NCBI GenBank assembly: GCA_965603825.1
Contig: CBFDEM010000047.1
Coordinates: 434,001 to 498,000, forward strand
Origin: Blepharisma stoltei ATCC 30299
Lineage: Eukaryota; Protista; Ciliophora
DNA length: 64,000 bases
Direction of reading: 5' to 3'
The notes beneath the pieces are model-generated. The model was not told the DNA's origin. It saw only the letters and a list, made by a program, of their open reading frames with translations, and searched no databases. The position numbers and the translations under genes are program-made. Position 1 is the first letter of the stretch. Every line of letters starts with the position of its first letter. Shown here piece by piece: positions 16,645 to 18,955 of the stretch.

Positions 16645-17301
16645 ATGTCAATTATAGGTCAAGGTCTTTCACGTGAAGACATCAGTAGGGCACTTGGACT
16701 TGTGAGATATTTAGAAGAACAGCCTGAATCCTTGAACTTTTCAGTTCCCGTGGACTACATATTGCTGCAGCTTCATGACTATCCATATATCATTAAGCAG
16801 CCAATGGACCTCTCAACGGTGAAAAAGAAAATAAAAACAAGTCAATATGCGAACTTTGAAGACATGCTTTGCGACTTAATCCTTATATGAGATAACTGTA
16901 GAACTTACAATATGGTTGAGTCTCCAATTGTGCAACAGGCTGATGCAATGGAAAGGTGCATGCTAAGATTTTGCAATCAGCATGGGATATCACTTGAAGC
17001 CGCAATGAGAAAGCCTAGAATTGAAGAACACCCTGATTGTGTAAGTTTTAAAGACAAAGAAGCTCTCTCTGAAAGGCTTAAAATAACCCCGCCAGAAAAA
17101 TTAGAGGAAATTGTACATATAATTGAAAGAGAATGCCCATATGCTATATTAAAAATTACAGAAGAAAGATCACAGTTAAGGATTGATGCAATCGATAAAA
17201 AGGTATTTCAAAGAATTAATAGGTAAATGATATACAGAATGCTAGACAATGAAGAAAGGGATTCTTCATTACCTATAAAAAAGATTAAAAATGAAGCCTA
17301 G
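16645..17301 (+). CDS. Small bromodomain + ET/NET domain protein
   Basis: FSVPVD...DYPYIIKQPMDLSTVKKK...LI[TGA=W]DNCRTYN, then an ET-like segment; one tiny intron; ends TAG 17299-17301. Confidence 0.9.
17223..17237 (+). other. 15-nt intron
   Basis: GTAAATGATATACAG, A10, carries an in-frame TAA. Confidence 0.8.
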
Positions 17302-17326
17302 TGAGTAATAATGATTAGCCATTATC

Positions 17327-18700
17327 CTAATTCTCATTCTTTTTACTTAATAAAACTGATTTCATCCTGGTGACATCTTTGCGATCCTCTTTAAAATCAA
17401 TCATAGAAGCGACCTTTTTCCAGCTAGTTTTATCGTTGAATTCAGCCTTTTGCTGCTTCTTGTAGGTTTCCTCATCTCTATTCATTGCTCTCTTCTGCTC
17501 TGTCATTTTGGCTCTGTTGTCATACCAAAGTTTTAACTCTTCTTTGGCTTTTCTTCTTTTCTCATCCTTAACTGCTCTTTCTTTTTCGTCTTTTTGGTAG
17601 AGTTTTCTCATAAACTCTTGATTTTCAGCATCTCGGGCTCTTGTCCTTTCGATTTCTTCTAAATCTTCTTCTGTTGGAGCATGAGGTGCTGTCCCAGCTT
17701 GGCCAAAAGCATCTTGATTGGACTCTTGGCCTGCAAAGTATTGAGGATCTGAGTTTTGAGCTCCGAAAGGCTGAGCTGCAAATGCATCACTGTATTGTGG
17801 TTCTGAGCTACCTCCAAAAATATCTCCACTGCTTTGAGGTTCAAATGCATCACTGTAAGGTGGAGCTGAGCTGCCTGCAAAAATATCTCCACTATACTGC
17901 TGAGTAGTTCCACCAAAGATATCACCAGATTCCCCGCTCTGTGGCTGATTTCCAAAAAAGTCGTTTTCCTCTTCAAATACATTCTGACTTGGCTGAGCCT
18001 GATTTCCCGCCCCAGAAAGCAGCCCCTGCATCGCTTGTTCAGCTTCCTTCTGTCCTGTTTTAATATCAAATGACATAAGCCCTTCCACTCCTTTTTCTTG
18101 GCTTCCTTCTACAATTTCTTCTTGCAAGTCTCCTCCATACCTCACACTCCTTCTGATAGGGTTCACTTTGTCTCCCAGTTCTGGTTTTTCCCATTCCATT
18201 TCTTCAAACTCGCCAGGCTGCATGATATTCCAATGGATTTCGCCTTCAGTTTTATTGAAATCGAAAATCTGGCTCCACAAGTTGTTGTTTTGATCAAGCT
18301 TAGCCTTTTGTAAATGCTGATCTTGTAAAGGATATGAAAAGTTGTAGGGACCAAATACAAGATTGCTTGAATATTCAATTGAAGGATCTGAGGAACAATA
18401 TAAATAAATTTTGAGATCTCTGCAGTTTTTAAGGCGAAATTGTCCACAGACTGCAGTGATTATGCAGTTCGAACAGTCACGGAGAAAAATTGGGCCTTCG
18501 GTAGGACCGAAGTGTAAGCGGCAATTTTTGCATTTGTCACCAGTGACTTGAGCAATGGTGTCGAGAAGATAAACAGTGCAATCTTCAAGGGTGTCAATTG
18601 AAAAATCATAGGGGAAAATTTGTCCTGGCTCTCGGGTTAAGGTTTCGCCTACTTTCTTTTCAAATCTAAAGTCAGCTGGATTAGGCCTTTTTCGTGCCAT
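17327..18700 (-). CDS. RP2/XRP2-like TBCC domain fused to a clathrin light chain-like C-terminal domain, 457 aa
   Basis: N-term CGQFRLKNC..PSIEYS..NNLWSQIFDF (RP2-like); C-term AKEELKLWYDNR...SWKKVASMIDF...KDVTRMKSVLLSKK (CLC-like); one uninterrupted ORF. Confidence 0.85.
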   Translation of the reverse strand: MARKRPNPADFRFEKKVGETLTREPGQIFPYDFSIDTLEDCTVYLLDTIAQVTGDKCKNCRLHFGPTEGPIFLRDCSNCIITAVCGQFRLKNCRDLKIYLYCSSDPSIEYSSNLVFGPYNFSYPLQDQHLQKAKLDQNNNLWSQIFDFNKTEGEIHWNIMQPGEFEEMEWEKPELGDKVNPIRRSVRYGGDLQEEIVEGSQEKGVEGLMSFDIKTGQKEAEQAMQGLLSGAGNQAQPSQNVFEEENDFFGNQPQSGESGDIFGGTTQQYSGDIFAGSSAPPYSDAFEPQSSGDIFGGSSEPQYSDAFAAQPFGAQNSDPQYFAGQESNQDAFGQAGTAPHAPTEEDLEEIERTRARDAENQEFMRKLYQKDEKERAVKDEKRRKAKEELKLWYDNRAKMTEQKRAMNRDEETYKKQQKAEFNDKTSWKKVASMIDFKEDRKDVTRMKSVLLSKKNEN

Positions 18701-18955
18701 TATAAATTAATAGGCAAAGTAAACGAATATAGCCGTGATATTGAAAAATTACAAAATTAACAGGTTTGTATAGAAATTCTGTAATTAATGGTTTTTGTTA
18801 ATTTAAGCTAAAGTTTTAAAACGCTTTTTTGCTTGCTAATAGGAACAATAAATAATCTATGACTTTATTAATAATTTTGGCTAAATTATAAAATTAATAG
18901 CTTTTTGTTTTGAAGTCTCTGCTCTTTATATCCCATTTTATACGATTTTATTATT

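What the first reader, a model, noticed from the sequence alone, without database searches (positions are those of the whole stretch)
17327..18700. RP2-like (ARL3-GAP) domain fused to a clathrin light chain domain
Seen: a single ORF with no TGA or intron joins needed. Residues ~1-160 follow RP2/TBCC, including the QFR arginine-finger motif (CGQFRLKNC) and PSIEYS. The last ~110 aa follow the clathrin light chain C-terminus (AKEELKLWYDNR...RAMNRDEE...SWKKVASMIDF...KDVTRMKSVLLSKK). Established: RP2 is the GAP for ARL3 in ciliary lipidated-cargo traffic and is localised by N-acylation (animals) or TOF-LisH motifs (trypanosomes); CLC binds the heavy-chain leg. No acylation motif is present here. 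Inference: the GAP is tethered to clathrin coats, possibly the coated pits (parasomal sacs) beside basal bodies, coupling endocytosis to ciliary traffic. I do not know of a description of this fusion.
Basis: partly seen in the sequence, partly recalled or inferred. Interest (0 to 1): 0.85.

Follow-up and report, generated by a model that had tools for sequence, protein, structure and literature searches.

The report
RP2-type GAP fused to clathrin light chain
This ciliate gene really does join the catalytic domain of RP2, the switch-off factor for the cilium GTPase ARL3, to a complete clathrin light chain; the same fusion occurs in ciliates, green algae, an oomycete and a rhizarian, yet I found no paper describing it, and it suggests that clathrin coats hold this ciliary regulator in place.

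Summary
Window 17327-18700 (- strand) is one uninterrupted 457-codon ORF of Blepharisma stoltei. Pfam finds TBCC (E 1.6e-39) and Clathrin_lg_ch (E 1.4e-11, above the curated cut-off). The N-terminal half matches human RP2 best and keeps its Gln/Arg-finger/Glu residues (Q87, R89, E109). The AlphaFold model superposes on RP2 in the RP2-ARL3 crystal at 0.9 A. The C-terminal 215 residues align with a whole standalone B. stoltei clathrin light chain. The 115-residue link between the halves is disordered and rich in D-x-F motifs. Spliced RNA contigs cover the whole ORF, and a sister-species transcript does too.

The fusion is not a ciliate invention. The same architecture occurs in Protocruzia, Furgasonia, Paramecium (diverged tail), Stentor-like organisms, several green algae, the rhizarian Lapot and the oomycete Achlya. 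Databases label these proteins automatically. Seven literature searches found no description.

Function is inferred, not shown: an alternative light chain that places an ARL3 GAP on clathrin coats. B. stoltei has two ARL3 genes and one heavy-chain gene, and I found no acylated RP2. The parasomal-sac localisation is untested. This scan had not noted the fusion elsewhere.

The parts
17327..18700 (-). Complete coding sequence of the fusion protein: 457 codons plus the TAG stop at 17327-17329. No intron.
   Evidence: ORF list and sequence. RNA contigs of three runs cover it without gaps.
18026..18700 (-). RP2-type beta-helix (TBCC/C-CAP) domain, residues 1-225. The Pfam TBCC core is residues 32-148, i.e. 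18257-18607.
   Evidence: Pfam E 1.6e-39. Human RP2 E 2.7e-36. AF2 pLDDT above 90 for residues 11-200. Foldseek best match 3bh6_B, rmsd 0.9 A over 153 columns.
18434..18442 (-). Codons for Q87-F88-R89, equivalent to RP2 Q116-F117-R118 (the arginine finger).
   Evidence: Pairwise alignment to 2bx6/3bh6. Q87 and R89 are kept in at least 90% of 41 fusion proteins.
18374..18376 (-). Codon for E109, equivalent to RP2 E138.
   Evidence: Alignment. Kept in at least 90% of 41 fusion proteins.
17681..18025 (-). Disordered linker, residues 226-340, with seven D-x-F motifs (DFF, DIF x3, DAF x3). From residue 242 it is collinear with the N-terminal region of the standalone B. stoltei light chains.
   Evidence: AF2 pLDDT about 40. 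Motif counts. Local alignment of residues 242-456 with the standalone light chains of L003/L004 over 196 positions.
17772..17893 (-). 63-nt (21-codon) tandem duplication inside the linker: 1.9 copies, 86% match.
   Evidence: Tandem Repeats Finder.
17330..17680 (-). Clathrin light chain core, residues 341-457. The Pfam Clathrin_lg_ch match covers residues 314-455, i.e. 17336-17761.
   Evidence: Pfam 45.2 bits. PDB light chains 6sct_D and 6wcj_B. 75% identical to the standalone B. stoltei light chain P0031.
17435..17662 (-). Predicted single long alpha-helix, residues 347-422. It corresponds to the heavy-chain-binding helix of light chains and contains W392.
   Evidence: AF2 model, pLDDT 88-97. 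Alignment to the mammalian light chain.
17420..17422 (-). Codon for W427 in the C-terminal W-K-K-V-A-S-M-I-D-F motif.
   Evidence: Invariant in 41 fusion proteins and in an 18-sequence alignment of fusion tails and standalone light chains.
18701..18735 (-). 5' untranslated leader. RNA contigs end at 18728-18735. An in-frame TAA lies at 18707-18709.
   Evidence: read-laying table 8. Upstream codons.

Best explanation
The gene encodes an alternative clathrin light chain whose N-terminal extension is an RP2-type GTPase-activating domain. Shown: one expressed ORF contains an RP2-like beta-helix with the catalytic Gln/Arg/Glu residues, a 115-residue disordered D-x-F-rich linker, and a complete light-chain module (long helix plus C-terminal motif). 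That module is 75% identical to a bona fide light chain of the same cell. Inferred: the tail occupies a light-chain site on the proximal leg of the single B. stoltei clathrin heavy chain, and the linker may also touch adaptor ear domains. The GAP domain would then sit on the cytosolic face of clathrin coats and switch off ARL3-GTP there. In this genome I found no N-acylated RP2, so coat tethering would replace lipid anchoring as the way to keep the ARL3 GAP outside the cilium. In ciliates this could be at the coated pits next to basal bodies; that last step is speculative.
For: Domains and catalytic residues. Fold: best match is RP2 in the RP2-ARL3 complex at 0.9 A, with a confident 76-residue helix in the tail. 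Expression: RNA contigs show a spliced 15-nt intron in the neighbouring gene, cover the ORF continuously, and stop 28-35 nt upstream of the ATG. A sister-species contig spans the whole ORF, and there is a B. japonicum transcript fragment. Constraint: between the two Blepharisma species the light-chain core is 95% identical and the linker 83%. Partners are present: two ARL3 orthologs (256 bits to ARL3 against 228 to ARL2), one heavy-chain gene, and seven adaptor-ear loci. The other RP2-like genes of the genome carry transmembrane tails instead, and TBCC and TBCCD1-like genes are separate. The architecture is kept across distant eukaryotes, which is a Rosetta-stone argument for a functional link.
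Against: No binding, GAP activity or localisation was tested. Of the three tryptophans in the heavy-chain-binding stretch of the aligned mammalian light chain, only the last aligns with a tryptophan here; I recall from the literature that the first two are the critical ones. The standalone B. stoltei light chains show the same pattern. Contigs cannot exclude an extra internal transcript start. The Alpha_adaptin_C profile found nothing in the genome, which is uninformative. D-x-F enrichment is confined to the heterotrich-type sequences and is not a feature of the whole family.
Confidence: 0.6

Rival explanations
1. The light-chain-derived tail no longer binds clathrin. It serves as a generic charged coiled coil for self-association or for docking to some other structure such as the basal body, as TOF-LisH does in trypanosome RP2.
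For: Only one of the central tryptophans of mammalian light chains is kept. In Paramecium-type orthologs the tail has diverged below Pfam detection. The helix is very K/E-rich.
Against: The tail is 75% identical to a standalone light chain of the same genome, which has the same tryptophan pattern. W427 is invariant and R445 is kept in at least 90% of the 41 fusions; both are invariant in the 18-row tail and standalone alignment. Fusion tails and standalone light chains interleave on the tree. Even the Paramecium-type tails match the light-chain profile at 98.7% probability.
Confidence: 0.2
2. The beta-helix domain does not act on ARL3. It acts on ARL2/tubulin like TBCC, or it is a non-catalytic binding module through which an ARF-like GTPase regulates clathrin assembly.
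For: RP2 and TBCC share the fold and the arginine finger. The TBCC structures also match. From my own knowledge, RP2 has reported tubulin-GAP cofactor activity.
Against: The match to RP2 (128.8 bits) clearly exceeds the match to TBCC (85.6 bits). The genome has its own TBCC with an N-terminal helical domain, and TBCCD1-like genes. Q/R/E are conserved in at least 90% of 41 fusions. ARL3 orthologs are present.
Confidence: 0.15
3. The fusion is an assembly or annotation artefact that joins two neighbouring genes.
For: Contig data alone cannot prove a single transcript (warning).
Against: There is no stop and no frame change over 457 codons. RNA contigs from three runs and from a sister species cover both halves. 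More than 40 independent sequences from genomes, transcriptomes and metagenomes of several eukaryotic groups have the same architecture.
Confidence: 0.02

Closest known systems
Human/animal RP2 (XRP2), the ARL3 GAP (PDB 2BX6, 3BH6/3BH7)
   Same: Same beta-helix TBCC/C-CAP fold (rmsd 0.9 A, 39% identity). The Gln-x-Arg finger and the Glu are conserved. ARL3 orthologs are present in the genome.
   Different: It lacks the first ~29 residues, which carry the Gly2/Cys3 acylation signal. It also lacks the C-terminal NDK-like domain. A disordered linker plus a clathrin light chain take that place.
Trypanosome TbRP2 (PMC3879569)
   Same: An RP2-like GAP domain without acylation or an NDK domain, targeted by an added protein module.
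   Different: TbRP2 uses N-terminal TOF-LisH motifs for basal-body tethering. Here the added module is C-terminal and is a clathrin light chain.
Canonical clathrin light chains (mammalian CLCa/b; B. stoltei standalone light chains P0031, P0170, P0077)
   Same: Pfam Clathrin_lg_ch match, long central helix, and the C-terminal W-x-K-V...D-F...K-D-V-x-R-M-x-S-V-L motif. The fusion is 55-57% identical over 196 aligned positions to the 201-aa B. stoltei light chains, including the acidic, D-x-F-containing N-terminal region.
   Different: It carries a 225-residue enzyme domain at the N-terminus. I know of no enzyme-bearing light chain in the literature.
Clathrin-binding ARF GAPs such as SMAP1/SMAP2 (from my own knowledge, not tested here)
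   Same: The same functional logic: a GAP for an ARF-family GTPase recruited to clathrin coats.
   Different: Those proteins use an ArfGAP zinc-finger domain and short clathrin-box motifs that bind the heavy-chain terminal domain. Here an unrelated GAP fold is built into a coat subunit.
Database entries with the same architecture (e.g. [quoted passage not shown]
   Same: TBCC plus Clathrin_lg_ch, both above the Pfam cut-offs, in the same order and at similar lengths (354-533 aa).
   Different: Their linkers are not D-x-F/DPF-rich. They carry only automatic names, and I found no functional study of them.

Membership tests
RP2 (ARL3 GTPase-activating protein) | TBCC/C-CAP right-handed beta-helix domain | tested here: met
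   Pfam TBCC E 1.6e-39. AF2 model pLDDT above 90. Foldseek 3bh6_B at 0.9 A.
RP2 (ARL3 GTPase-activating protein) | Catalytic arginine finger R118 with Q116 and E138 | tested here: met
   R89, Q87 and E109 align to them. Each is kept in at least 90% of 41 fusions.
RP2 (ARL3 GTPase-activating protein) | N-terminal Gly2 myristoylation / Cys3 palmitoylation signal (animal RP2) | tested here: not met
   The N-terminus is MARKRP, with an in-frame TAA upstream. The canonical clade starts MGC....
RP2 (ARL3 GTPase-activating protein) | C-terminal NDK-like domain (animal RP2) | tested here: not met
   No NDK family in the Pfam scan. The C-terminus is a clathrin light chain.
RP2 (ARL3 GTPase-activating protein) | Stimulates GTP hydrolysis by ARL3 | not testable with these tools
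   Only the presence of ARL3 orthologs (L020/L021) was shown.
Clathrin light chain | Match to Pfam Clathrin_lg_ch above the gathering score | tested here: met
   45.2 bits against 22, profile positions 75-214 of 222.
Clathrin light chain | Long central alpha-helix (the heavy-chain-binding region) | tested here: met
   Helix 347-422, pLDDT 88-97.
Clathrin light chain | Conserved C-terminal motif (W-x-K-V ... D-F ... K-D-V-x-R-[ML]-[KR]-S-V-L) | tested here: met
   Aligned to 6sct_D/6wcj_B. In the 41 fusions W427 is invariant and R445 is kept in at least 90%; both positions are invariant in the 18-row alignment of fusion tails and standalone chains.
Clathrin light chain | Central tryptophans that contact the heavy chain in mammalian chains | tested here: inconclusive
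   Only W392 aligns with a mammalian Trp. The other two positions are not Trp (Lys at one, unclear at the other). The standalone B. stoltei light chains have the same pattern.
Clathrin light chain | N-terminal acidic consensus sequence (the EED... segment) | tested here: inconclusive
   An EEDLEEIER segment lies at residues 334-342 and is shared with the standalone ciliate chains. It was not aligned with confidence to the mammalian consensus.
Clathrin light chain | Binds the clathrin heavy-chain proximal leg | not testable with these tools
   One heavy-chain gene is present. No multimer prediction is available.

The most novel reading that the evidence does not exclude
RP2 fused to a clathrin light chain is an ancient, possibly ancestral, eukaryotic form of the ARL3 GAP. 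Clathrin coats at the base of the cilium would then be the original anchor that keeps ARL3-GTP confined to cilia, and the acylated RP2-NDK of animals would be a later replacement. In heterotrich ciliates the fusion gene and the ordinary light-chain genes also keep exchanging, or giving rise to, each other's light-chain module.
Probability: 0.2. Interest if true: 0.85.

Novelty: new variant of a known kind. Interest (0 to 1): 0.7.

Why it matters
How the ARL3 GAP is kept outside the cilium is central to the model of lipidated-cargo delivery to cilia, and RP2 loss causes X-linked retinitis pigmentosa. Outside animals and trypanosomes, RP2 targeting is unknown. A conserved gene fusion that builds the GAP into a clathrin coat subunit points to a direct link between periciliary endocytic coats and the ARL3 cycle. 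I found that link nowhere in the literature. It is also the first enzyme-bearing clathrin light chain I know of. Relatives exist in Paramecium, in Stentor-like organisms and in what I recall (unverified) to be a Chlamydomonas species. That makes the hypothesis testable by tagging, knock-down and GAP assays.

Tried and rejected
1. A single clade of light-chain-tailed proteins on the RP2-domain tree was rejected by the AU test, p 4.9e-5. The tree therefore does not show a single origin without later tail loss or replacement. The labels depend on my tail detection, and the groups were named after a first tree had been seen.

2. Recent gene conversion between the fusion tail and the standalone B. 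stoltei light chains was rejected. Third-codon-position identity is only 47-50%, and the same codon is used at about 57% of identical residues.

3. The Alpha_adaptin_C (PF02296) search of the genome found nothing and rang in no control, so it is uninformative. PF02883 found seven ear loci.

4. I tried to read the genetic code of the metagenomic loci L011/L013/L015 from ORF lengths, to name their organisms. The result was inconclusive.

5. The Phytophthora capsici PcTBCC1 paper (PMC11595192) never mentions clathrin. I could not show that its gene is the ortholog, so I did not use it.

6. Seven literature searches for RP2/XRP2/TBCC/cofactor C together with clathrin light chain found no description. 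The library lacks most subscription journals.

7. The final homolog search, with a light-chain alignment, returned only 14 hits because of its candidate cap. No taxon-rich light-chain tree could be built.

Full report
**Observation**

Window 17327-18700 on the minus strand is a single 457-codon ORF.
- It has no in-frame TGA, TAA or TAG and ends in TAG.
- An in-frame TAA lies 9 nt upstream of the ATG, so the protein starts MARKRP.
- Pfam finds TBCC at residues 32-148 (E 1.6e-39) and Clathrin_lg_ch at residues 314-455 (E 1.4e-11; 45.2 bits against a curated cut-off of 22).
- Among solved structures the best match is human RP2 (E 2.7e-36; query 3-161 against RP2 32-190). TBCC is clearly weaker (E 3.4e-23).
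- In that alignment Q87-F88-R89 match RP2 Q116-F117-R118, and E109 matches E138.
- The tail alone matches mammalian light chains. The alignment includes the Trp of the E-E-W segment (W392 here) and the C-terminal W-x-K-V...D-F...K-D-V-x-R-M/L-x-S-V-L motif.

**Organism and gene inventory**

The assembly has 41.46 Mb in 64 contigs. Its three standalone light chains are deposited as Blepharisma stoltei 'Clathrin light chain'. In-frame TGA codons inside conserved genes fit the TGA=Trp code.

The genome holds:
- Four light-chain loci: this fusion plus standalone genes of 173, 201 and 201 aa.
- Six TBCC-domain loci: this fusion; a tandem pair of RP2-like genes whose tails carry two hydrophobic transmembrane segments; one TBCC with an N-terminal helical domain; and two TBCCD1-like genes.
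- No RP2 with an MGC acylation start and an NDK domain, as far as I could find.
- Two ARL3 orthologs. Their best structure hits are ARL3 at 256 bits, against ARL2 at 228.
- An ARL2-like gene, one clathrin heavy-chain gene with seven CHCR repeats, and seven adaptor-ear loci.

**Expression**

Four runs hold 90-92% of the sampled words of the stretch. I laid three of them.
- Their contigs lack 15 nt at window 17221, which is a spliced mini-intron of the convergent neighbouring gene.
- They leave the intergenic stretch 18736-18930 uncovered. They are therefore RNA.
- Single contigs run without gaps across 17327-18700 and end at 18692-18735.
- A 1376-nt contig from a related organism covers 17320-18692, with only a diverged 62-nt piece of the linker replaced.
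- A Blepharisma japonicum transcriptome peptide covers residues 160-457 at 90% identity.

Between the two Blepharisma species the light-chain core is 95% identical, the end of the RP2 domain 94%, and the linker 83%.

One caveat: contigs can merge overlapping transcripts, so an additional internal start is not excluded.

**Anatomy**

An AlphaFold2 model was built on 41 fusion sequences.
- Residues 11-200 form a confident beta-helix (pLDDT above 90).
- Residues 232-340 are disordered (pLDDT about 40).
- Residues 347-422 form one long helix (pLDDT 88-97), followed by two short helices.

Foldseek's best hit is RP2 in the RP2-ARL3 complex: 3bh6_B, rmsd 0.9 A over 153 columns, 39% identity.

The linker has seven D-x-F motifs and a 63-nt tandem duplication at 17772-17893.

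Residues 242-456 align over 196 positions (55-57% identity) with the whole 201-aa standalone light chains. The fusion therefore contains an essentially complete light chain, including its acidic D-x-F-bearing N-terminal region. Related heterotrich-type fusions carry up to nine DPF motifs in the linker. A related standalone light chain carries seven. From established knowledge, DPF and D-x-F are motifs that bind adaptor appendages. Whether they do so here is inference.

**Distribution**

A profile of five fusions was searched against 1.84 billion representatives. A second look with my own tail profile and with Pfam shows the same two-domain architecture in the following:
- Ciliates: Protocruzia adherens, Furgasonia blochmanni, and many unnamed heterotrich-like sequences, some annotated 'protein XRP2'.
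- Green algae: Bryopsis, a pedinophyte, Tetraselmis, Mesostigma, and a protein in assembly GCA_016834595.1. From memory, unverified, that assembly is a Chlamydomonas species.
- The rhizarian Lapot gusevi.
- The oomycete Achlya hypogyna, where UniProt names it 'Clathrin light chain'.

Paramecium-type relatives have tails that Pfam does not call. Those tails nevertheless match the light-chain profile with 98.7% probability, E 1.9e-16.

The ESM Atlas holds a 61-member cluster named after both domains, with Chlorophyta the commonest phylum.

Across 41 fusions, Q87, R89 and E109 are each kept in at least 90%, and W427 is invariant. From my own knowledge, all the named taxa build flagella at some life stage.

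**Evolution**

On a 94-row RP2-domain tree the MGC-type canonical RP2 proteins form one well-supported clade. The light-chain-tailed proteins are scattered through the rest. Holding them together as one clade is rejected (AU p 4.9e-5). This implies several gains, or one early gain with later tail losses or replacements, or tails that I failed to detect. The tree cannot tell these apart.

On a tree of light-chain cores, fusion tails and standalone light chains of heterotrich-type organisms interleave:
- The Blepharisma fusion is sister to the two 201-aa B. stoltei standalone chains (support 90/86).
- Another group of fusion tails is sister to a clade of standalone chains that includes those of Stentor coeruleus (97/92).
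- Holding all standalone chains together is rejected (p 2.5e-4). The group was named after the tree had been seen.

Third-codon identity of 47-50% argues against recent gene conversion. The cause of the interleaving remains open. It could be old conversion, domain swapping, or standalone genes born from the fusion.

**Mechanism**

Shown: an intact, conserved, expressed protein with an RP2-type catalytic domain and a complete light-chain module.

Inferred:
- The tail takes a light-chain position on the heavy-chain leg.
- The flexible linker presents the GAP on the outer face of the coat, where it hydrolyses ARL3-GTP.
- Tethering to clathrin replaces N-acylation as the means of keeping the GAP at the cell cortex outside the cilium. 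In the paralogs, a transmembrane tail would play that role.

It is reasonable but untested. The presence of the fusion in algae and an oomycete shows that the arrangement is not specific to that ciliate structure.

Rivals:
- A tail that has lost clathrin binding.
- A domain acting on ARL2/tubulin, or acting as a GTPase-controlled regulator of clathrin.
- An artefact, which is effectively excluded.

**Comparison and novelty**

The protein works like RP2 in its catalytic half, but it fails two features of animal RP2: the acylation signal and the NDK domain. Its tail meets the sequence and fold criteria of a light chain. Binding could not be tested.

Seven literature searches and a reading of the TbRP2 paper found no description of RP2 or TBCC joined to a clathrin light chain. 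Public databases do hold and auto-name such proteins. I therefore rate it a new variant of known kinds: real, widespread and apparently undescribed.

Noticed in passing
G000 contig C58, loci L006:1423-2670 and L007:1423-2670 (+): A tandem pair of 415-aa RP2-like genes. Each has an N-terminal RP2 beta-helix with a Q-I-R finger motif and shares the V-N-P...Y-G-G segment with the fusion. Each ends in two strongly hydrophobic segments (about residues 314-344 and 347-375). They look like RP2 domains anchored by transmembrane helices. Relatives cluster with them in the RP2-domain tree.
   Followed up: partly
Proteins P0031/P0170 (loci L004/L003), P0109, P0116: Standalone light chains of heterotrich-type ciliates have N-terminal regions rich in DPF / D-x-F motifs: seven DPF in P0109, two in Stentor coeruleus P0116, and DIF/DPF in B. 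stoltei. I do not know this as a general feature of light chains.
   Followed up: partly
Light-chain-core tree of P0001-P0176: Fusion tails and standalone light chains interleave phylogenetically in heterotrich-type organisms. Monophyly of the standalone chains is rejected (AU p 2.5e-4). Synonymous sites between the B. stoltei fusion and the standalone genes look saturated. The cause is unexplained.
   Followed up: partly
window 16645-17226 (+), intron at about 17221: The convergent neighbour is a bromodomain-like gene. RNA contigs remove a 15-nt intron from it at 17221. Its transcript and that of the fusion gene are assembled into one contig, so their 3' ends appear to overlap or abut.
   Followed up: no
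Proteins P0014-P0016, P0019, P0020, P0042, P0043, P0053 (representative library, taxa unknown): Large proteins of 650-2500 aa carrying two to five tandem RP2/TBCC-like beta-helix domains. I know of no description of such multi-domain proteins.
   Followed up: no
G000 contigs C54 and C28 (L020, L021) and C45 (L023): Two near-identical ARL3 orthologs (178 aa) and one ARL2-like gene. The Arf-family search gave 150 scored matches in the genome, a large small-GTPase repertoire.
   Followed up: partly
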